DNA from: Magallana gigas
Lineage: Eukaryota
Direction of reading: 5' to 3'
Assembly (NCBI RefSeq): GCF_963853765.1
Contig: NC_088854.1
Span: 39,308,001-39,372,000, forward strand
Length of the DNA stretch: 64,000 nucleotides
Below the pieces are notes generated by a model. That model searched no databases. It saw only the letters and a program-made list of their open reading frames with translations, and was not told where the DNA came from. Position 1 is the first letter of the stretch. Every line of letters starts with the position of its first letter. Position numbers and translations under genes: made by a program. Shown here one piece after another: positions 34,171 to 51,623 of this stretch.

Positions 34171-34657
34171 TAGGGATGTCAACGAGTACCCGGTTTTAAA
34201 ACTTAAAATGTCAATTGCACTTGTACATACAGTAATTAGGATTTCCTCCGCCTCTAAATATGCTAAATTACCGTTATCGTCTGTCTTCTACCCTTATTTT
34301 TGGCTTACTTTAATGATTTGTTTTTACTGATCATCGTTTATATAGTCTATTATATAAATTAGATAGCACACAGTAAAGAAATTGAACATACCTAAAATGC
34401 CGCCACCTACTTCAAAGGTCTGGAAATATTTTGAAAGAACTGAAGATTCAAAAAACGTAGAATGTCAGCTGTACGAAGTAAACTTATCCTATACGAGGGG
34501 AACGACAAACATGTTAAATCAAATTCGTCTTAAACATAAGGAGGAATTTGACAGGCCAGAAATTCCAGAACAACAACCGACTTTATCGAATTTTGTCAAT
34601 TCTCCAAGAAGCCGTAAATACTCGGGAAAGAGACAGATGATACTACACGTGCGATTG
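34171..34657 (+). mobile_element. 5' end of a hAT-like DNA transposon with a degenerate BED zinc-finger exon; truncated by a gap
   Basis: Starts TAGGGATGTCAACGAGTACCCG (hAT-like TIR start). From ATG 34397: MPPPTSKVWKYF...VECQLYEVNLSY..GTTNMLNQIRLKH, a BED pattern with the second Cys changed to Tyr and the first His to Gln. Confidence 0.75.
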
Positions 34658-35171
34658 NNNNNNNNNNNNNNNNNNNNNNNNNNNNNNNNNNNNNNNNNNN
34701 NNNNNNNNNNNNNNNNNNNNNNNNNNNNNNNNNNNNNNNNNNNNNNNNNNNNNNNNNNNNNNNNNNNNNNNNNNNNNNNNNNNNNNNNNNNNNNNNNNNN
34801 NNNNNNNNNNNNNNNNNNNNNNNNNNNNNNNNNNNNNNNNNNNNNNNNNNNNNNNNNNNNNNNNNNNNNNNNNNNNNNNNNNNNNNNNNNNNNNNNNNNN
34901 NNNNNNNTCAACTTACTAGGTCTTTACCATTAAATAGAAAAACTATACAATACAAAACTTACAACTGTTATTACAAGATATAGCATTGTTATTACGATAA
35001 ATGAAAATGAGTGATATATACGAGAATAAAAAAACATGCATATAAACTATATTAAACAAATGCCTTCATATTCATCAATACTGGGGAGGACAGACATCCC
35101 TGCACCCCCCCCCCCCCCCCCCATTTGATGCTACTTCGAAAAGTCATCTTCAAATCTTTTTTCACAATAAC

Positions 35172-35206
<35 letters not shown>

Positions 35207-35396
35207 GAACAATAGGTATGATAAAGTCAGCTTAATGGAGTCATAATACAAACAATCTGGACAATGTACAATAATACATGTAGATCCTGTATAAATAAAA
35301 TCCATTTTTCCCCCTTGGAACTCGGATAGCCCTGATTGCTGCCAATATTTACAAGAGCAGACTTTAATCACCGCTTCTGCACATATAGGGACTCAA

Positions 35397-35724
35397 CGTT
35401 ACGCAGGCAGGGATCACCGCACACCTACGCAACTCAACAGGTACCAACGTTTACGCAAGCAGGGATGACCGCACACTTGCGCCAACAGCTCAACCTAACG
35501 CAAGCAGGGATTGCCGCACACTTGCGCTAGAAAGGCCTGAACACCAGCAGGAATGACCATACACTAGACTAAGTGCTCCGCCGCAACCACCACCAATACA
35601 AGCAGGTATGACTGCACACTTGTATTAATGCGATACAGGGCAGGAATGACCGCACACTTTGTATCGAAGGTTAGAAAACACTAAGATTAGATAGAGCAGG
35701 GATGTTCACATACTCAATCTATCC
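35397..35724. repeat. Array of 6-7 stem-loops with a conserved 16-nt loop CAGG(G/A/T)ATGACCGCACA and variable spacers
   Basis: 20-nt cores at 35407, 35459, 35504, 35547, 35602, 35640 and (degenerate) 35696; spacers of 32, 25, 23, 35, 18 and 36 nt; flanking arms are complementary. Confidence 0.85.
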
Positions 35725-36068
35725 ATACCTGTTCAAGTTTAACCCCATTCATTCGCACATCATAATGCAATAGACACTGTCCCTATATATGTGCCGGCCT
35801 AAAATAATTCATAGTATCTAAAAATTGAAAATATAAAAAAAACCAAACTAATCCGGCCTAACCCAAAACTTCTTATGCATAACAACTTATATACATTGAA
35901 TATTTATTATGGTATAAAAATAATCATTACAATAATTGGTTAACAGTGGATGCATTAATTAAAATAATCAAGAATCAATAAATCAAGGGCAATAACTCAA
36001 TACAGTAATACAAAAAGATTCTAATGAAAAAATAGCTGCCTGCTTCAATTTTATAGTCATATCACATG

Positions 36069-38050
36069 TTGAGCTTTCCTGGCTGTTTAGTTTCTGAGAA
36101 GAAGATTTTTAAAGATTTACTTTATATATTCCTATGCAAAACTTTAACACCCCCCCCCCCATGTGGCCTCATCCTTCCCCCAGGGATCATGATTTTCACA
36201 ACTTTGAATCTACACTACCTGAGGATACTTCCACACAAGTTTCCGCTTTCCTGGCTGATTAGTTTCTGAGAAGAAGATTTTTAAATATTAACTCTATATA
36301 TTCCTATGTAAAACTTCGACCCCCCATTGTGCCCCACCCTACCCCCCGGGATCATGATTTTCACAACTTTGAATCTACACTGCCTGAGGATGCTTCCACA
36401 CAAGTTTCAGCTTTCCTGACTGATTAGTTTCTGAGAAGAAGATTTTTAAAGATTTACTCTATATATTTCTATGTAAAATTTTAACACCCCCCCCCCCCCA
36501 ATGTGGCCTCATTCTACCCCCAGGGATCATGATTTTCACAACTTTGAATCTACACTACCTGAGGATGCTTCCACACAAGTTTCAGCTTTCCTGGCTGATT
36601 AGTTTCTGAGAAAAAGATTTTTAAAGATTTACTCCATATTTTCCTATGTAAAATTTCGACCCCCCATTTTGGCCCCACCCTACCCCCAGGGTCATGATTT
36701 TCACAACTTTGAATCTACACTACCTGAGGATGCTTCCACACAAGTTTCAGCTTTCCTGGCTGATTAGTTTCTGAGAAGAAGATTTTTAAAGATTTACTCT
36801 ATATATTCCTATGTAAAATTTCGACCCCCCCATTGTGGCTCCACCCTACACTACCTGAGGATGCTTCCACACAAGTTTCAGCTTTCCTGGCTTTTTAATT
36901 TCTGAGCAGAAGATTTTTAAAGATTTACTCTATATATTCCTATGTAAAACTTCGACCCCCCATTGTGGCCCCACCCTACCCCGGGGGTCATGAATTTCAC
37001 AACTTTGAATCTACACTACCTGAGGATACTTCCACACAAGTTTCCGCTTTCCTGGCTGATTAGTTTCTGAGAAGAAGATTTTCAAATATTAACTCTATAT
37101 ATTCCTATGTAAAACTTCGACCCCCCATTGTGCCCCACCCTACCCCCCGGGATCATGATTTTCACAACTTTGAATCTACACTGCCTGAGGATGCTTCCAC
37201 ACAAGTTTCAGCTTTCCTGACTGATTAGTTTCTGAGAAGAAGATTTTTAAAGATTTACTCTATATATTTCTATGTAAAATTTTAACACCCCCCCCCCCCA
37301 ATGTGGCCTCATTCTACCCCCAGGGATCATGATTTTCACAACTTTGAATCTACACTACCTGAGGATGCTTCCACACAAGTTTCAGCTTTCCTGGCTGATT
37401 AGTTTCTGAGAAAAAGATTTTTAAAGATTTACTCCATATTTTCCTATGTAAAATTTCGACCCCCCATTTTGGCCCCACCCTACCCCCAGGGTCATGATTT
37501 TCACAACTTTGAATCTACACTACCTGAGGATGCTTCCACACAAGTTTCAGCTTTCCTGGCTGATTAGTTTCTGAGAAGAAGATTTTTAAAGATTTACTCT
37601 ATATATTCCTATGTAAAATTTCGACCCCCCATTGTGGCTCCACCCTACACTACCTGAGGATGCTTCCACACAAGTTTCAGCTTTCCTGGCTTTTTAATTT
37701 CTGAGCAGAAGATTTTTAAAGATTTACTCTATATATTCCTATGTAAAACTTCGACCCCCCATTGTGGCCCCACCCTACCCCGGGGGTCATGAATTTCACA
37801 ACTTTGAATCTACACTACCTGAGGATGCTTCCACACAAGTTTCAGCTTTCCTGGCTGTTTAGTTTCTGAGAAGAAGATTTTTAAAGATTTACTCTATATA
37901 TTCCTATGTAAAACTTCGACCCCCCATTGTGGCCCCACCCTACCCCCGGGGGTCATGAATTTCACAACTTTGAATCTACACTACCTGAGGATGTTTCCAC
38001 ACAAGTTTCAGCTTTCCTGGTTTTCTGGTTCTTGAGAAGAAGATTTTTGA
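36069..38050 (+). repeat. ~166-bp satellite array (Cg170-like), about 12 monomers
   Basis: Monomer GCTTTCCTGGCTGATTAGTTTCTGAGAAGAAGATTTTTAAAGATTTACTC...GAATCTACACTACCTGAGGATGCTTCCACACAAGTTTCA, repeated about every 165-174 bp, with two ~131-bp deleted monomers. Confidence 0.92.
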
Positions 38051-38282
38051 AAAATTCTTGAAATTTTTCATTAATTTCTAATTATCTCCCCTTGAAAACG
38101 GGTGTGGCCCTTAATTTTCACAACTTTGAATTCCCTTTGCCTAAGGATGATTTGTGCCAAGTTTGGTTGAAATTGGCTTAGTAGTTCTTGAGAAGATGTT
38201 GAAAATGTGAAAAGTTTACGGACAGACCGACAGACGGACGCACAGACGGACAGACGGACGACAGACAAAATGTGATCAGAAT

Positions 38283-38320
<38 letters not shown>

Positions 38321-40772: not shown

Positions 40773-42884
40773 ATGGAAGTGAAAATAACAGTTTTGTGGT
40801 CTTTTATCCTTCTGCAACTTGTTGTTTCTGAACGATGTGGGGATGGATATTGCAAGTGTTCGAAGGCTCGAAAAGTTGCCACGTGTATGTCTAGAAGGAG
40901 GCAATTAAATTACTTTCCTTCATTGCCCACTTACGTAAAGCAGCTCAGATACAGTGGCAACTATCTACCCCACCTTACTCGAGACTTAATGATTAATTTG
41001 ACCAGGGTCAATCTAGAACAACTCTATTTAGAAGATAATGTGATGTTCAAAGTTGATCCAGATGCCTTTGAGAATTTGACAACTCTAGTTAAACTTCAAA
41101 TTTCTCATGACATGATACTCAATGCCAGTATTGTTGCACAAGTTCTCCATAATGTGAGTCGTTCTGTTAAAAAGTTAGTATTAAACCACAACAAATGGAA
41201 TTCGATACCGGACAACATCTTTGATGGTCTAAAAGATTCAAACATTCATTTCATCGACTTGTCTTTTAACAACTTGCATTCATTCAACGGTTTGAGGATT
41301 TTTCGAAATATTCCAAATCTTAAATACTTGATTTTGGATGGAAACCCCATATTGGACAGTGATACAGATTTCCATAACATGGAATATATATTTAAATTAA
41401 GTTTACAATATACGTTCATACAAAACGTTCCCACATTTTGTGATGACAATGGGGAAAGTCTTCTGCCCCGCATGCGATCTCTTAATTTGGACCATTCTTC
41501 ATTACGATCCATCTCTCGAAACGATTTTATTTGTCTGCCCGATCTTTGGAAATTGTCACTTTCATTTACAGGCATCACCGTGATACAAAATGACACGTTT
41601 TTGGATATGCCAGTACTTCAGACTCTTATGTTACAAAATGTGGTGAGGCTCAGACGCTTAGAATATTTCGCGTTTCGCTCTGCTTCTCTTCAATCGTTCA
41701 AATTTGGGTCGTCAAAATTTAAATTTGACAACAAAGGTCGATACAATAATGATTTGTTTAAGTTTGCGCCAAACATAACAAATATTGAGCTATTCGACAA
41801 TCAGATTTCTGATGGATCTACTCTGAAAACACTTTTGTGGAACTTGATTAAGTTGCAGAAGTTGAATCTCCAGGGATGTGGGATAAATTATCTTGCACGT
41901 GGAACATTCGATAGAATGCCAGATCTTCGAACAATCATCTTAAAAGGCAACAGCTTGTACGGGTGGGATCCAACCATGTTTAACAAACTTTTCAATTTAA
42001 GAGCCCTGTATTTATCAGGGAACAGTGTTGCCGTTGTTAACAGGACTTCTCTTGCGTTTATCGGCAAAATTAATCTCAAATTTATTGATTTAGCAGACAA
42101 TCCGTTTGCATGTACCTGTCAACAGCTTTGGTTCCGTGACTGGTTAAAAACAGCCAAAAATATTACAGTTGCCTTTTATCCGAAGAGATATGTCTGTAGA
42201 TCTCCCCCTAAATGGGACAATACTTTGGTAGCTTTATTCAATTACACCGAAGAAGATTGTCGGGAGAAAAATCCTTGGATTTTGATAGGAAGTGTTCTAG
42301 GATCGGTTGTTTTTGTGTGCATGGTTGTCGTCATCGTCATATACACACATCTTCCGACCGTCAGAAATATCATCTACTTGATTCGTTTACGCAGGAAAGG
42401 CTACGTGAGACTGGTGAACTCCGAGGAGTACATGTTTGACTGTTATGTCGTTAGCTGTGAAACTGATGAACAATGGGTGTTCCAAACTCTGTCATCTACT
42501 TTAGAGGTTAAACATTCTTATCGTTTGTGTATACCTACAAGAGATTTTGACATCGGTGCAAGTATAGCTGATCAGATTGAAGAAAAAATGAGGGAAAGTA
42601 AGAAAATCATCATTGTGATGTCAAACGATTTTGCTCAGGACGAATGGTGTCAGTTTCAGCTAGAGAAAGCACAGGAGCGGATCCGAAACCAAGGAGAAGA
42701 AGCTGTTGTGTCAATCATGCTGCACGATATTGATCATAAACATATGACATCAACCATCAAGAATTTGTTACGTAAAAGTTCGTATGCTACTTGGGTGAAA
42801 GGTAAAATTGTCAGTAAGCTGTTCTGGGACATTGTTGTTGCAGCTATAGAAAAACCTTTTGGTAATCCACCAATTGCTGTTTGA
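40773..42884 (+). CDS. Toll-like receptor A (single coding exon, 703 aa; single-cysteine-cluster type)
   Basis: Signal peptide, LRR-NT (CGDGYCKC...ATC), LRRs, LRR-CT (NPFACTCQQLWFRDWL...YVCRSP...DC), TM (WILIGSVLGSVVFVCMVVVIVIY), TIR (FDCYVV...LCIPTRDF...IIVMSNDFAQDEWC). Confidence 0.97.
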   Translation: MEVKITVLWSFILLQLVVSERCGDGYCKCSKARKVATCMSRRRQLNYFPSLPTYVKQLRYSGNYLPHLTRDLMINLTRVNLEQLYLEDNVMFKVDPDAFENLTTLVKLQISHDMILNASIVAQVLHNVSRSVKKLVLNHNKWNSIPDNIFDGLKDSNIHFIDLSFNNLHSFNGLRIFRNIPNLKYLILDGNPILDSDTDFHNMEYIFKLSLQYTFIQNVPTFCDDNGESLLPRMRSLNLDHSSLRSISRNDFICLPDLWKLSLSFTGITVIQNDTFLDMPVLQTLMLQNVVRLRRLEYFAFRSASLQSFKFGSSKFKFDNKGRYNNDLFKFAPNITNIELFDNQISDGSTLKTLLWNLIKLQKLNLQGCGINYLARGTFDRMPDLRTIILKGNSLYGWDPTMFNKLFNLRALYLSGNSVAVVNRTSLAFIGKINLKFIDLADNPFACTCQQLWFRDWLKTAKNITVAFYPKRYVCRSPPKWDNTLVALFNYTEEDCREKNPWILIGSVLGSVVFVCMVVVIVIYTHLPTVRNIIYLIRLRRKGYVRLVNSEEYMFDCYVVSCETDEQWVFQTLSSTLEVKHSYRLCIPTRDFDIGASIADQIEEKMRESKKIIIVMSNDFAQDEWCQFQLEKAQERIRNQGEEAVVSIMLHDIDHKHMTSTIKNLLRKSSYATWVKGKIVSKLFWDIVVAAIEKPFGNPPIAV

Positions 42885-49490: not shown

Positions 49491-51623
49491 ATGAGATATA
49501 GAGCAATGAACGTAAAAAGAACATTTTTGTGGTGCCTTTTTCTCGTTGGACTTGTTGTGTCTGAACGATGTGGAGACGGTTATTGCAAGTGTAAAAGAGC
49601 CGAAAAAGTTGCCACATGTATGTCCAAAAAAAGACAGCTGAACTACTTTCCTACTCTGCCATCTTACGTTCAACAGCTCAAGTACAGCGGCAACTATCTT
49701 CCAAACCTTACTCGAGACTCTCTCATCAATATGACCAGGCTAAATCTCACAGGACTCAATCTAGACAATAATATGATGAAAAATGTTGATCCAAACGCTT
49801 TCGAAGATTTGATATATCTCGTTAAACTTCAAATTTCCCACGACAAGATACTTAATGGAAATATTCTTGCCAGTGCTCTTCATAATGTGAGTCGTTCCGT
49901 CGAAAAGTTAGTTTTGCAGCACAACAAATGGGATTGGATACCTGACAACGTGTTCGATGGTCTAAATGGCTCAAATGTTTACTATATCGATCTCTCTTAT
50001 AACAACTTGCGTTCATTCAACGGTACACGGCTTCTGCTAAAAATTCCTAGACTGAAATACTTGATTTTAGATGAAAATCCCTTATCGCATAGTGATATCG
50101 ATTTTCATAACATGGAATATATGTTTAAAATAAGCTTACAAAATACATATATCCAAAAAGTTCCCACGTTTTGTGACGGCAATGGAGAAAGTTTTTTGCC
50201 TCGTTTGCGATCTCTCTATTTGGATCGCTCTTCAATGAAATCCGTTTCTAGAGACGATTTTCCCGGTAGATGTCTGCCATTTCTTTGGAAGTTGTCTCTC
50301 TCATTCTCAGACATCAGCAGTATTCAAAACGACACATTTGCTGGTTTGCCAGTGCTGAAGTATCTTTTGTTACAAAATATGGTCAAACTCAGACTCCTGG
50401 ATTATTTTGCTTTTCATTCTGCATCTCTTGAACTATTGAATCTTGGATCTTCAAAGTTTAAATTTGTTTACAAAGGTCGATACAATAATGATTTGTTTAA
50501 GTTTACACCAAACATGAACAATCTTTCTCTTTTCGACAATCAAATCACGGATGGTTCTACTTTGAAAACGCTTTTATGGCACCTGGTCAGACTGCAAAAG
50601 TTAAATCTTCAGAGCTGTGATTTAAATTATCTTGCACGTGGAACATTTGATAGAATGCTAGATCTTCGAATTATCATTTTAAAAGGCAATAGCTTGTACG
50701 GATGGGATCCCGACATGTTTAGCAAACTTTCAAATCTGAACACACTGTACCTGTCTGGAAACAATATTGCCGTTGTGAACCGAACCTCCCTTGAGTTCAT
50801 AGCTAAAATAAACCTTGAATATATTGACTTAGCAAACAATCCTTTAGCATGTTCCTGCCAACAGCTGTGGTTCCGTGACTGGCTAAAGGAAAGCAAAAAC
50901 ATAACAGTTCCTCACTATCCTAGCAGATATGTCTGTAGATCTCCCCCAGAATGGGACAAAAAAATGTTAGCTTCCTTCAATTACACCGAAGAAGATTGCC
51001 GGGAGAAAAATCCTTGGATTTTGATAGGAAGTGTTCTAGGATCGGTTGTTTTTGTGTGCATGGTTGTCGTCATCGTCATATACACACATCTTCCGACCGT
51101 CAGAAATATCATCTACTTGATTCGTTTACGCAGGAAAGGCTACGTGAGACTGGTGAACTCCGAGGAGTACATGTTTGACTGTTATGTCGTTAGCTGTGAA
51201 ACTGATGAACATTGGGTTTTTCAGACTTTGTATTCTACATTAGAAGACGAGTATGCTTTCCACCTGTGCATACCTTCAAGAGATTTTGATGTCGGTGAGA
51301 GCAAAGCTGATCAAATTGAAGAAAAGATGAAGGAAAGTAAGAAAATCATCATTGTGATGTCTAACGATTTTGCTCAGGACGAATGGTGTCAGTTTCAGCT
51401 AGAGAAAGCACAGGAGCGGATCCGAAATCAAGGAAAAGAAGCAGTGGTCCTCATCATGCTTCGTGACATTGATCACAAACACATGACGTCAACCATCAAG
51501 AATCTGTTACGTAAAAGTTCGTATGCAACATGGGTGAAAGGTAAAATCGCTACCAAGCTGTTCTGGGACATTGTTGTAGCTGCTATAGAAAAGCCTTTCG
51601 GAAACCCTCCTGTTGCTATTTGA
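49491..51623 (+). CDS. Toll-like receptor B (single coding exon; probable start at ATG 49506)
   Basis: Paralog of TLR A with the same LRR-NT/LRR/LRR-CT/TM/TIR layout. MNVKRTFLW (49506) aligns with MEVKITVLW of A. Confidence 0.97.
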   Translation: MRYRAMNVKRTFLWCLFLVGLVVSERCGDGYCKCKRAEKVATCMSKKRQLNYFPTLPSYVQQLKYSGNYLPNLTRDSLINMTRLNLTGLNLDNNMMKNVDPNAFEDLIYLVKLQISHDKILNGNILASALHNVSRSVEKLVLQHNKWDWIPDNVFDGLNGSNVYYIDLSYNNLRSFNGTRLLLKIPRLKYLILDENPLSHSDIDFHNMEYMFKISLQNTYIQKVPTFCDGNGESFLPRLRSLYLDRSSMKSVSRDDFPGRCLPFLWKLSLSFSDISSIQNDTFAGLPVLKYLLLQNMVKLRLLDYFAFHSASLELLNLGSSKFKFVYKGRYNNDLFKFTPNMNNLSLFDNQITDGSTLKTLLWHLVRLQKLNLQSCDLNYLARGTFDRMLDLRIIILKGNSLYGWDPDMFSKLSNLNTLYLSGNNIAVVNRTSLEFIAKINLEYIDLANNPLACSCQQLWFRDWLKESKNITVPHYPSRYVCRSPPEWDKKMLASFNYTEEDCREKNPWILIGSVLGSVVFVCMVVVIVIYTHLPTVRNIIYLIRLRRKGYVRLVNSEEYMFDCYVVSCETDEHWVFQTLYSTLEDEYAFHLCIPSRDFDVGESKADQIEEKMKESKKIIIVMSNDFAQDEWCQFQLEKAQERIRNQGKEAVVLIMLRDIDHKHMTSTIKNLLRKSSYATWVKGKIATKLFWDIVVAAIEKPFGNPPVAI

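What the first reader, a model, noticed from the sequence alone, without database searches (positions are those of the whole stretch)
35397..35724. Repeat-spacer array of covarying stem-loops with a conserved 16-nt loop, carried inside a Helentron-type element
Seven units share a loop of consensus CAGG(G/A/T)ATGACCGCACA, separated by 18-36-nt unrelated spacers. This looks CRISPR-like, but the spacer ends base-pair around each loop. The stems differ in sequence yet stay paired: GTTACGCAGG/CCTACGCAAC, CGCAAG/CTTGCG, CTAACGCAAG/CTTGCGCTAG, AATACAAG/CTTGTATT, GATACAGGG/CTTTGTATC, TAGATAGAG/CTCAATCTA; unit 4 pairs poorly. Such compensatory change is hard to get from simple tandem amplification and implies selection on structure. 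Most mismatches are A.C on +, which are G.U wobbles on -, favouring a minus-strand RNA or ssDNA with loop UGUGCGGUCAUYCCUG (unit 6 is the exception). Inference: a multivalent protein-binding scaffold. Options are RepHel/HUH recognition hairpins on the ssDNA intermediate, or a decoy RNA analogous to CsrB (whose CAGGAUG loops the + strand superficially resembles), or a captured structured ncRNA spread by the element. I do not recognise it as a described family.
Basis: partly seen in the sequence, partly recalled or inferred. Interest (0 to 1): 0.85.

Follow-up and report, generated by a model that had tools for sequence, protein, structure and literature searches.

The report
Seven-hairpin array carried by oyster HINE
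A real array of seven small hairpins with the same 16-letter loop sits in an optional 0.73-kb passenger segment of a known oyster rolling-circle transposon (Cg_HINE); it exists in thousands of copies, so it is a mobile-element signal, probably from an RNA, and not a host gene.

Summary
The array is real. There are seven hairpins (35398-35722). Loops are 79% alike between units and stems 45% alike. 53 of 70 stem cells are Watson-Crick pairs, against 32 expected, and 9 of 10 pairs change on both sides. The "spacers" are not unrelated: the stems are diverged copies of one tandem monomer.

The array lies in a minus-strand Cg_HINE_1-like Helentron (35172 to about 38312) with subTIRs, IR, (GTCY)n, a CL1 165-bp satellite and a 3' palindrome. 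It sits in a roughly 732-nt segment (35316-36047) that another HINE copy replaces with 47 nt.

Reads from four public oyster runs show this segment at a rough order of thousands of copies under several species labels. This copy is decayed. RNA reads are about 90% one-stranded and come mostly from a subfamily that is rare in DNA.

This scan met the same array before on other DNA of this genome (s1-361629, s1-405585, s1-382356), where it was read as a retrotransposon LTR piece. Here that origin stays unproven: no target duplication, and an ambiguous TG..CA.

Best reading: a passenger whose hairpins evolved under selection as a multivalent single-strand, probably RNA, protein-binding platform. 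The minus strand is weakly favoured. RepHel, CsrB-like and CRISPR-like readings are not supported. Interest is moderate.

The parts
35172..35210 (-). 3' end of the HINE. The terminus is at 35172, the 12-nt palindrome GGCCCATGGGCC at 35179-35190, and the 3' subTIR at 35196-35206.
   Evidence: Depth rises about 1000-fold at 35172, with AT-rich, low-agreement loose ends in all four runs. The same end (...CCTCTTGTT followed by unrelated DNA) is seen in an independent copy, L068. The motifs were located.
35211..35315 (-). The rest of the HINE right flank, shared with copies that lack the hairpin segment.
   Evidence: This is the highest depth of the stretch, 2.2-4.7 million summed word depth in X1. 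It is collinear with L068:228-340.
35316..36047 (.). Optional passenger segment of about 732 nt that holds the array. It is AT-rich outside the array. The left boundary is uncertain by about 4 nt (35316-35320).
   Evidence: Joints 35300/35313/35315->36048 appear in DNA and RNA runs, flagged 'between: not known'. L068 has an unrelated 47 nt at the same place, between ...GACTATAAAAT and GGGGAAAATGG. No second copy exists in the window.
35380..35392 (.). Left arm of the inverted repeat that encloses the whole array.
   Evidence: It pairs with 35779-35793 in the minimum-energy fold of either strand. Copies with AT inserted after 35382 have the perfect version, and these dominate the RNA runs.
35398..35433 (.). 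Hairpin 1: 10-bp stem and loop at 35408-35423.
   Evidence: 45.2 bits.
35450..35485 (.). Hairpin 2: loop at 35460-35475, an exact match to the motif.
   Evidence: 49.5 bits.
35495..35530 (.). Hairpin 3: loop at 35505-35520.
   Evidence: 49.0 bits.
35538..35573 (.). Hairpin 4: loop at 35548-35563. The stem is largely lost (4 WC of 10).
   Evidence: 36.1 bits.
35593..35628 (.). Hairpin 5: loop at 35603-35618. The stem has CG changed to TA in both arms.
   Evidence: 44.4 bits.
35631..35666 (.). Hairpin 6: loop at 35641-35656, an exact match. It has two G.T pairs on the + strand.
   Evidence: 34.2 bits. At 35659, half of the other copies read the letter that makes a G-C pair.
35687..35722 (.). Hairpin 7: loop at 35697-35712, with 4 mismatches in this copy.
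   Evidence: 39.2 bits. Most other copies differ at 35706 and 35711, towards the common loop.
35779..35793 (.). Right arm of the enclosing inverted repeat.
36048..36071 (-). Short HINE segment between the satellite array and the passenger segment.
   Evidence: It is collinear with L068:150-180.
36072..38056 (-). Central tandem array of about 12 copies of a 165-bp monomer of the CL1/Cg170 type.
   Evidence: TRF output. A monomer string is found 407 times in the CL1 arrays of the Cg_HINE paper's Supplementary Table 1.
38220..38267 (-). (GTCY)n-type microsatellite of the HINE left flank, which reads GACR on the + strand.
   Evidence: Sequence; anatomy as given in PMC7492417.
38284..38312 (-). HINE left flank: the 5' subTIR at 38302-38312 and its complementary IR at 38284-38294.
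   Evidence: The 11-nt subTIR is perfectly complementary to the 3' subTIR at 35196-35206, and the IR has 1 mismatch.

Best explanation
SHOWN. The seven hairpins lie in a roughly 732-nt passenger segment between the satellite array and the 3' flank of a minus-strand Cg_HINE_1-like non-autonomous Helentron. Other HINE copies lack that segment. The segment with its seven distinguishable units is present at a rough order of thousands of copies in runs under several oyster species labels, so the array already had its seven distinct units before the family spread. This copy is a decayed one. The units are diverged tandem copies of one hairpin monomer of about 45 nt. Between units, the 16-nt loop was kept in sequence, while the stems changed but stayed paired. 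INFERRED. The array evolved under selection in a source element as a row of identical binding sites displayed on a single-stranded nucleic acid and closed by a 15-16-bp outer stem. Most likely this was an RNA read from the window's minus strand (loop UGUGCGGUCAUYCCUG), serving as a multivalent platform for one sequence-specific protein such as a Gag/nucleocapsid, export or packaging factor. The source is probably a retrotransposon LTR, as other reports of this scan say, but I could not prove that here. The HINE acquired the segment once and copied it. In HINE copies it is a passenger with no role in rolling-circle transposition.
For: HINE anatomy: with the definition from PMC7492417. Terminus at 35172. 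The segment is optional: joints, and L068 has 47 unrelated nt in its place. High copy number and several species labels: at array positions 43-91 contigs carry the listed majority letters, and summed depth is 0.5-0.9 million against 74 for the locus-specific contig in X1. The picture is the same in X4 (organism B) and X16 (organism C). Unit-specific letters are shared by most copies, and at 35415, 35552, 35613, 35706 and 35711 this copy departs from the majority in its loops. Structure: 9 of 10 pairs covary, 0 of 500 shuffles reach the observed value, and 53 WC cells compare with 32.4 under the null. Loop against stem: 79% against 45% identity overall; between unit groups, 84% against 46% for inner stems. 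Strand: as RNA the minus strand gives z -2.93 with all seven hairpins and the outer stem in the MFE, against z -1.84 for the plus strand. As DNA the two strands are alike (-1.77 and -1.70). Pairing is 85.7% against 80%. RNA: in raw poly(A) reads, first mates lie on + about 10-14 times more often than on - over the array. Earlier scan notes place the same array in LTR contexts; these are leads only.
Against: No alignment of independent copies could be built, because the collections I could search hold no copy. All covariation evidence therefore comes from seven paralogous units in one decayed copy. LTR origin is not shown here. There is no target-site duplication next to 35316/36047. The TG..CA ends become ambiguous once L068 is compared, because TCCA is shared. 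Both orientations give a plausible TATA and poly(A)-signal layout. The strand preference is small, and three of the seven A.C mismatches are one inherited position. The kind of library of X21 is unknown, and its reads come mostly from a rare subfamily, so the read-strand bias may reflect a few host transcripts. RNA depth is flat across the whole segment, with no start or end site. No binding protein is known.
Confidence: 0.5

Rival explanations
1. Double-stranded enhancer. The conserved 16 nt is a repeated composite transcription-factor site in the U3-like part of the segment, and the palindromic flanks are a by-product. Its GACCGCA fits the Runt-domain consensus RACCRCA, and CAGGAAT/CAGGGAT is ETS-like. 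Retroviral LTR enhancers carry repeated 'core' sites in a similar way.
For: The loop sequence is far better conserved than the stems. In the + orientation the array lies upstream of a TATAAAA (about 35912) and an AATAAA (about 35980), the position of U3 repeats. RNA depth shows no start inside the segment. The match to TF consensus sequences is from memory and was not tested.
Against: It does not explain why the arms stay complementary through compensatory changes, nor the outer 15-16-bp stem. Only 2 of 7 loops in this copy carry an exact RACCRCA. A match of a 16-mer to some known factor motif is expected by chance.
Confidence: 0.2
2. No function. A quasi-palindromic monomer was tandemly duplicated, and its arms were kept complementary by replication template switching between inverted-repeat arms, which copies a change from one arm to the other without selection.
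For: Template switching is documented to create and maintain perfect hairpins and to mimic compensatory substitution (PMC8794818, PMC8604942). The CG-to-TA change in both arms of units 5 and 6 is a dinucleotide change of the kind such events copy. HINE-borne copies, including this one, decay in their loops.
Against: Arm-to-arm copying can at most double arm divergence relative to the loop. Observed divergence between unit groups is 54% for inner stems against 16% for loops. All loops keep the same orientation, and the invariant G-C closing pair is not predicted either.
Confidence: 0.17
3. Helentron ssDNA signal. The hairpins form on the transposed (element-sense, window minus) strand and are bound by RepHel or a host ssDNA protein during rolling-circle transposition.
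For: The array lies in the 3' part of the element, and the slightly better-pairing strand is the element's sense strand. The subfamily that bears the segment reached roughly a fifth to an eighth of the depth of the shared right flank.
Against: Other HINE copies, and the published HINE anatomy, lack the segment. The hairpins differ in stem and loop from the terminal palindrome and lie 225-550 nt from the end. As DNA, neither strand folds notably better than shuffles, and the strands do not differ. Other scan notes report the array outside HINEs.
Confidence: 0.08
4. A host non-coding RNA gene or protein decoy (CsrB-like sponge) that happens to lie in a transposon.
For: RNA reads cover the array. 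They are strongly one-stranded and come from a subfamily that is rare in DNA but dominant in RNA under two species labels.
Against: A rough order of thousands of copies, no defined RNA ends, no Rfam family, and no transcription of this locus's unique flanks (depth 0 at 34950-35066 in X21). CsrA is bacterial.
Confidence: 0.05

Closest known systems
Cg_HINE_1 / Helitron-N2_CGi-type non-autonomous Helentrons of Crassostrea gigas (Vojvoda Zeljko et al. 2020, PMC7492417)
   Same: The carrier has every described substructure in the described order and orientation: 5' subTIR, complementary IR, (GTCY)n microsatellite, CL1/Cg170-type 165-bp central repeats, 3' subTIR and terminal palindrome.
   Different: The published anatomy puts the right flank directly after the last repeat. 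Here about 732 nt with seven hairpins lie between them. The paper and its supplements do not mention this segment or the motif.
Cis-acting RNA structures of retroviruses and LTR retrotransposons that display repeated protein-binding loops (MPMV constitutive transport element with two identical internal loops; MLV packaging signal with repeated GACG-loop hairpins; HTLV Rex-responsive element in the LTR). From general knowledge.
   Same: Several copies of one conserved unpaired sequence are held on stems whose sequence is free to vary. They are located in or near an LTR and enclosed by a long-range stem.
   Different: There are seven tandem units instead of two to four, there is no sequence similarity, the partner protein is unknown, and the LTR origin itself is not proven here.
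Tandem repeats in U3 or 3'-UTR regions of LTR retrotransposons, and retroviral enhancer repeats with Runx 'core' sites (general knowledge; Macas et al. 2009 as cited in PMC7492417)
   Same: A short tandem array with a conserved core inside an LTR-like, AT-rich segment. The loop contains a Runt-type consensus.
   Different: Those arrays act as double-stranded DNA and show no compensatory pairing of the repeat flanks.
Hairpins created and maintained by replication template switching (Monttinen and Loytynoja 2022, PMC8794818)
   Same: The arms stay complementary through paired changes, including an adjacent two-base change in both arms.
   Different: That mechanism does not by itself predict a loop conserved three to four times better than the stems.
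Helitron/Helentron 3'-terminal hairpin (termination signal of rolling-circle transposition)
   Same: A hairpin on the transposed strand of the same element.
   Different: The terminal hairpin is a single GC-rich palindrome 7 nt from the end (35179-35190). The array hairpins are internal, optional and unrelated in sequence.

Membership tests
HINE (Helentron-associated interspersed element), Cg_HINE group 1 | An 11-12-nt 5' subTIR followed by a complementary IR in the left flank | tested here: met
   The subTIR lies at 38302-38312 (minus strand, GCTCACCTGAG) and the IR at 38284-38294 with 1 mismatch. Five matches were found against 0.17 expected by chance.
HINE (Helentron-associated interspersed element), Cg_HINE group 1 | A microsatellite of GTCY type at the end of the left flank | tested here: met
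   38220-38267 reads GACR repeats on the + strand, which is GTCY on the element strand.
HINE (Helentron-associated interspersed element), Cg_HINE group 1 | A central satellite-like tandem array in fixed orientation (CL1/Cg170 type) | tested here: met
   About 12 copies of 165 bp at 36072-38056. A monomer string occurs 407 times in the paper's CL1 table.
HINE (Helentron-associated interspersed element), Cg_HINE group 1 | A 3' subTIR complementary to the 5' one, followed by a palindrome and a sharp end in AT-rich DNA | tested here: met
   The subTIR is at 35196-35206 and the palindrome at 35179-35190. The end at 35172 is shared by hundreds of contigs with unrelated AT-rich flanks and by L068.
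Solo LTR or LTR fragment of a Ty3/gypsy retrotransposon (the claim of earlier scan reports) | 5'-TG...CA-3' termini with short terminal inverted repeats | tested here: inconclusive
   35316-17 reads TG and 36046-47 reads CA. However, L068 shares TCCA with the segment's end, so the boundary may lie at about 35320. No terminal inverted repeat is seen.
Solo LTR or LTR fragment of a Ty3/gypsy retrotransposon (the claim of earlier scan reports) | A 4-6-bp target-site duplication directly flanking the LTR | tested here: not met
   The flanks are CCCCT and ATTTT. An ATTTT pair exists (35304-08 and 36048-52), but it is 7 nt away from the TG end, and the comparator copy has a replacement rather than an empty site.
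Solo LTR or LTR fragment of a Ty3/gypsy retrotransposon (the claim of earlier scan reports) | The same sequence as paired direct repeats around gag-pol, next to a PBS and PPT, somewhere in the genome | not testable with these tools
   No oyster genome collection is searchable here, and the window holds one copy only. This rests on notes s1-361629, s1-405585 and s1-382356.
Rfam families (any described structured RNA, including CsrB/RsmB-type sponges) | A covariance-model match | tested here: not met
   Nothing lies on the array at E up to 10. The only row is a chance frnS hit at 35772-35857 (17.8 bits against a gathering score of 60).
CRISPR array | Identical repeats separated by unrelated unique spacers | tested here: not met
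   The repeat extends into the 'spacers', and these are homologous between units and pair around each repeat. The long ORFs checked in the window are animal-type LRR+TIR (Toll-like receptor) genes.
Helentron 3' termination hairpin | A single palindrome a few nt from the 3' end, present in all copies | tested here: not met
   The array is 225-550 nt internal and is absent from other copies.

The most novel reading that the evidence does not exclude
The array is a natural multivalent RNA scaffold. Seven hairpins show one 16-nt loop and are clamped by a 16-bp outer stem. A mobile element would use it to load many copies of one protein for packaging, export or escape from silencing. On this reading, a rare and better-preserved subfamily, with a perfect outer stem, is what is actually transcribed under two oyster species labels, so a live source lineage or a domesticated transcript still uses it.
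Probability: 0.3. Interest if true: 0.7.

Novelty: new variant of a known kind. Interest (0 to 1): 0.4.

Why it matters
If the hairpins are a working RNA signal, they would be a compact natural example of a repeated-hairpin protein-recruiting array, like the engineered MS2/PP7 arrays, in a mollusc mobile element. They would then give a handle to find the binding protein. It also shows that a Helentron can carry a foreign structured segment to very high copy number, which matters for anyone scanning oyster genomes for structured RNAs: this motif will turn up again and again and should be masked as a transposon. For HINE biology it adds a module that the published anatomy does not list.

Tried and rejected
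1. Other copies for a multi-copy alignment. Exact-pattern scans of JGI metagenome contigs (two patterns) and of IMG/VR (right-flank pattern) found nothing. The bacterial/archaeal genome scan gave 66 single hits, about the chance number, and none with two loops.
2. Fetching copies through predicted ORFs. The 64-aa ORF over units 1-3 has no relative in the protein collection. An ORF of the satellite gave one 825-bp contig (L067), a diverged bivalve HINE whose single 3-mismatch loop match is a chance resemblance in the left-flank region. An ORF of the right flank gave L068, a HINE copy without the segment. L068 was useful as a comparator but holds no array.
3. Rfam: no family.
4. Full-text paper search for the loop sequence: none. 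The Cg_HINE paper's supplements do not contain it. The oyster satellitome paper lists a 48-bp satellite, CgiSat30, but at 68.7% A+T it is not this array.
5. CRISPR-like and CsrB-like readings were rejected, as set out in the membership tests.
6. Inferring the RNA strand from the read direction was rejected as decisive. The library type is unknown, and the reads come from a rare subfamily.
7. The A-rich loose ends at 35172 in RNA are not poly(A) tails, because the DNA runs show the same AT-rich flanks.
8. A second array, or further degenerate units, in the window: none.

Full report
THE OBSERVATION

The region 35397-35724 holds seven copies of a 16-nt motif. Six match CAGGNATGACCGCACA with at most 2 mismatches, where 0.02 matches are expected in shuffles of the window. 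The seventh, at 35697, has 4 mismatches. Loop starts are 35408, 35460, 35505, 35548, 35603, 35641 and 35697. The stretches between loops are 22-40 nt long.

I aligned the units as 40-nt blocks (A1 on the + strand, A2 on the - strand) and tested a 10-bp stem around the loop.
- 9 of 10 pairs change on both sides.
- 80% (+) or 85.7% (-) of cells form standard pairs.
- None of 500 column shuffles reaches any of the five measures.
- Sliding the partner by 1-3 columns drops pairing to 22-44%.

In my own null model each 3' arm carries its observed number of changes at random places. It gives 32.4 +/- 3.0 Watson-Crick cells against 53 observed (0 of 20000). A covariance model built from the seven units finds exactly these seven in the window and nothing else below E=1. 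Hairpin 4 has lost most of its stem. The core observation therefore stands.

Two details need correction. First, the direct repeat runs into the "spacers". Units 1-3 share 32 nt that include both arms, and all 5' arms are recognisable variants of one arm. Inner-stem identity is 48%, outer-stem 40% and flanking columns 23%. The units are diverged tandem copies of one hairpin monomer with linkers of 2-20 nt, not a repeat-spacer array.

Second, the wobble argument for the minus strand is thin. There are 7 A.C against 3 G.T mismatches on the + strand, but three of the A.C cases are one inherited position in units 1-3.

WHERE IT SITS

To the right of the array lies a tandem array of about 12 copies of 165 bp (36072-38056). 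A string from its monomer occurs 407 times in the CL1 arrays of the Cg_HINE paper's Supplementary Table 1. Beyond it, on the minus strand, come three left-flank features:
- a (GTCY)n microsatellite (38220-38267);
- an inverted repeat (38284-38294);
- an 11-nt subTIR (38302-38312).

The perfect complement of that subTIR is at 35196-35206, followed by the palindrome GGCCCATGGGCC at 35179-35190. This is the published anatomy of non-autonomous Helentrons of the Pacific oyster (PMC7492417), in minus orientation. Its CL1 flanks match Repbase Helitron-N2_CGi according to that paper.

Reads and contigs from four public runs fix the 3' end. Depth rises about a thousand-fold at 35172. Hundreds of contigs and 1482 RNA reads leave the stretch there into AT-rich sequence that agrees poorly between records, which indicates many different insertion sites. 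An independent copy from an ENA assembly (L068) ends at the same ...CCTCTTGTT.

THE ARRAY BELONGS TO AN OPTIONAL SEGMENT

Depth falls about three-fold at 35300-35315 and stays lower up to 36047. Joints 35300/35313/35315->36048 occur in DNA and RNA runs, flagged as possibly having other letters between.

L068 explains them. Between ...GACTATAAAAT and GGGGAAAATGG it has 47 unrelated nt where the window has about 732 nt. The loose-end consensus of many contigs at 35312-35315 is that same 47-nt sequence. The published description, in which the right flank follows the last repeat, fits the L068 type.

The hairpin segment is thus a passenger of one HINE subfamily and is not required for transposition.

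COPY NUMBER AND SPREAD

At array positions, 43-91 contigs per run carry the listed majority letters. Summed word depth is 0.5-0.9 million in X1, where the locus-specific contig has depth 74. In X4 it is 64-94 thousand against 14.5. The tool warns that this is not a copy number; I read it only as a rough order of thousands of copies.

Runs under at least three coded species labels, and several "oyster metagenome" runs, hold the stretch. At most sites the same unit-specific letters appear in nearly all copies. The seven units were therefore already distinct before the family spread.

At 35415, 35552, 35613, 35706 and 35711 this copy differs from most others inside its loops. In each case the majority letter is the one the other loops carry. 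This copy has thus decayed, with no sign of constraint on its loops. Rare contigs join one loop to another (for example 35466->35712), so unit number varies among copies.

WHAT SHAPED IT

Between the two groups of related units (1-3 and 5-6), loops are 84% identical, inner stems 46% and outer stems 29%. Pairing is nevertheless kept.
- Pair 2 is A-T, G-C or G.T in different units.
- A CG step became TA in both arms of units 5 and 6.
- The outer pairs of units 1 and 3 are G-C against C-G and T-A against A-T.
- The closing G-C pair is invariant.

Replication template switching between arms can copy changes across a quasi-palindrome without selection (PMC8794818), and I keep that as a rival. It can at most double arm divergence relative to the loop, whereas the observed ratio is about 3.4. 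It also does not explain an invariant loop. I therefore infer past selection on both hairpin formation and loop sequence, which points to a site read in single-stranded form.

WHICH STRAND, AND RNA OR DNA

The table gives folds of 35376-35797.

| Molecule | Strand | MFE (kcal/mol) | z-score |
|---|---|---|---|
| RNA | minus | -145.6 | -2.93 |
| RNA | plus | -102.7 | -1.84 |
| DNA | minus | -52.6 | -1.77 |
| DNA | plus | -47.9 | -1.70 |

In the minus-strand RNA fold, all seven hairpins and an outer stem (35380-35392 with 35779-35793) are in the minimum-energy structure. This mildly favours a minus-strand RNA. That strand is also the sense strand of the HINE.

In raw poly(A) RNA reads (X21), first mates lie on + about 14:1 over the array and 5.5:1 over the shared right flank. 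The unique flank has no reads. If the library is of the usual dUTP kind, the RNA is the minus strand, but the library type is not on record.

The RNA also comes mainly from a subfamily that is rare in DNA:

| Variant | X21 (RNA) | X16 (RNA) | X1 (likely DNA) | X4 (likely DNA) |
|---|---|---|---|---|
| AT inserted after 35382 (makes the outer stem perfect) | 102 of 127 reads | 90% of depth | 0.7% | 0.4% |
| 6 nt missing at 35566 | 64% | 49% | 1.4% | 3% |
| 1 nt missing at 35834 | 80% | 93% | 0.2% | 0% |

A few loci, or a small live lineage, thus supply most of the RNA under two species labels. This is interesting in itself. It also means the strand bias cannot be read as a property of the family. 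RNA depth is flat over the whole segment and no start or end site stands out.

ORIGIN OF THE SEGMENT

This scan had already met the same seven-hairpin array on other DNA of this genome.
- s1-361629: the follow-up calls it a decayed piece of a Ty3/gypsy LTR trapped in a HINE.
- s1-405585: the follow-up calls it a solo LTR, with the RNA on the opposite strand.

I treated these as leads, and in this window I could test them only in part. The skipped stretch 35316-36047 starts TG and ends CA. However, L068 shares TCCA with its end, so the boundary is uncertain by 4 nt. There is no target duplication at those ends. An ATTTT pair lies 7 nt off. Both orientations offer a TATA box and a poly(A) signal in AT-rich sequence. 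The comparator copy shows a replacement, not an empty site.

The LTR origin is therefore plausible, and it would fit the RNA-dominant rare subfamily. It remains unproven here.

MECHANISM

My best reading, at about 0.5, is as follows. The array arose in a source element, probably a retrotransposon, as a tandem row of identical loop sites on hairpins, clamped by an outer stem. It worked on RNA as a multivalent platform for one sequence-specific protein. A HINE master copy then took the segment up and spread it, and in HINEs it decays as a passenger.

The rivals are:
- a double-stranded enhancer with repeated Runt/ETS-like sites (0.2; the motif match is from memory and is expected by chance for some factor);
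- a neutral quasi-palindrome kept by template switching (0.17);
- a Helentron ssDNA signal (0.08);
- a host RNA or decoy (0.05).

COMPARISON AND NOVELTY

The carrier is a member of a known family, with all defining HINE features met. The array itself matches no Rfam family. It was not found in the full-text paper search for the loop sequence or in the Cg_HINE paper and its supplements.

It works most like the repeated-loop cis elements of retroviruses (CTE, packaging hairpins), but it is not a member of any of them. I rate it a new variant of a known kind: a mobile-element cis structure captured and amplified by a Helitron-type element.

Interest is moderate (0.4), for three reasons: it is a high-copy transposon part, this copy is dead, and the scan has seen it before. 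The unusual architecture and the RNA-dominant rare subfamily keep it worth a targeted follow-up.

LIMITS

No masked N stretch was touched. All folding and counting used this copy as it stands.

Noticed in passing
window 35382, 35566-35571, 35834: RNA runs under two species labels (X21 raw reads, X16 contigs) are dominated (49-93%) by a variant subfamily that makes up only 0-3% of depth in the likely-DNA runs X1 and X4. It has AT inserted after 35382 (giving a perfect outer stem), 6 nt missing at 35566 and 1 nt missing at 35834. A few loci or a small live lineage supply most transcripts.
   Followed up: partly
window 40773-42884 and 49491-51623 (+): Two intronless paralogous ORFs of 703 and 710 aa with LRR repeats and a C-terminal TIR domain. 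These are tandem Toll-like receptor genes about 2.5 kb and 11 kb from the HINE.
   Followed up: partly
window 34382-34657 (+), next to the masked run 34658-34907: An ORF with a BED zinc finger (E 5.7e-7) runs into a masked N stretch. It is probably a transposase-derived or domesticated BED gene. The masked part was not read.
   Followed up: no
window 35466->35712, 35386->35451, 35502->35579 (joints): Rare contigs join one hairpin unit to another, so copies with fewer units exist. Unit number varies among family members through deletions between the repeated loops.
   Followed up: no
window 34950-35027: The flank left of the HINE is itself repetitive, with summed depth of 12-15 thousand in X1 against about 74-200 for 35067-35105. 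The HINE sits next to another, lower-copy repeat. A C18 run lies at 35105-35122.
   Followed up: no
L067 (ENA ERZ926044, 825 bp): A diverged bivalve HINE-like contig with Cg170-like monomers and a left flank, found in a public metagenome assembly. Its GCAGGCATGACCC at 458-470 resembles the loop, but it aligns to the window's left-flank region at 38100-38130, so the resemblance is chance.
   Followed up: yes
window 36072-38056 and 35196-35206: Each satellite monomer contains CTACACTACCTGAGGATG, which resembles the subTIR GCTCACCTGAG. The central repeats may derive from duplicated flank sequence.
   Followed up: no
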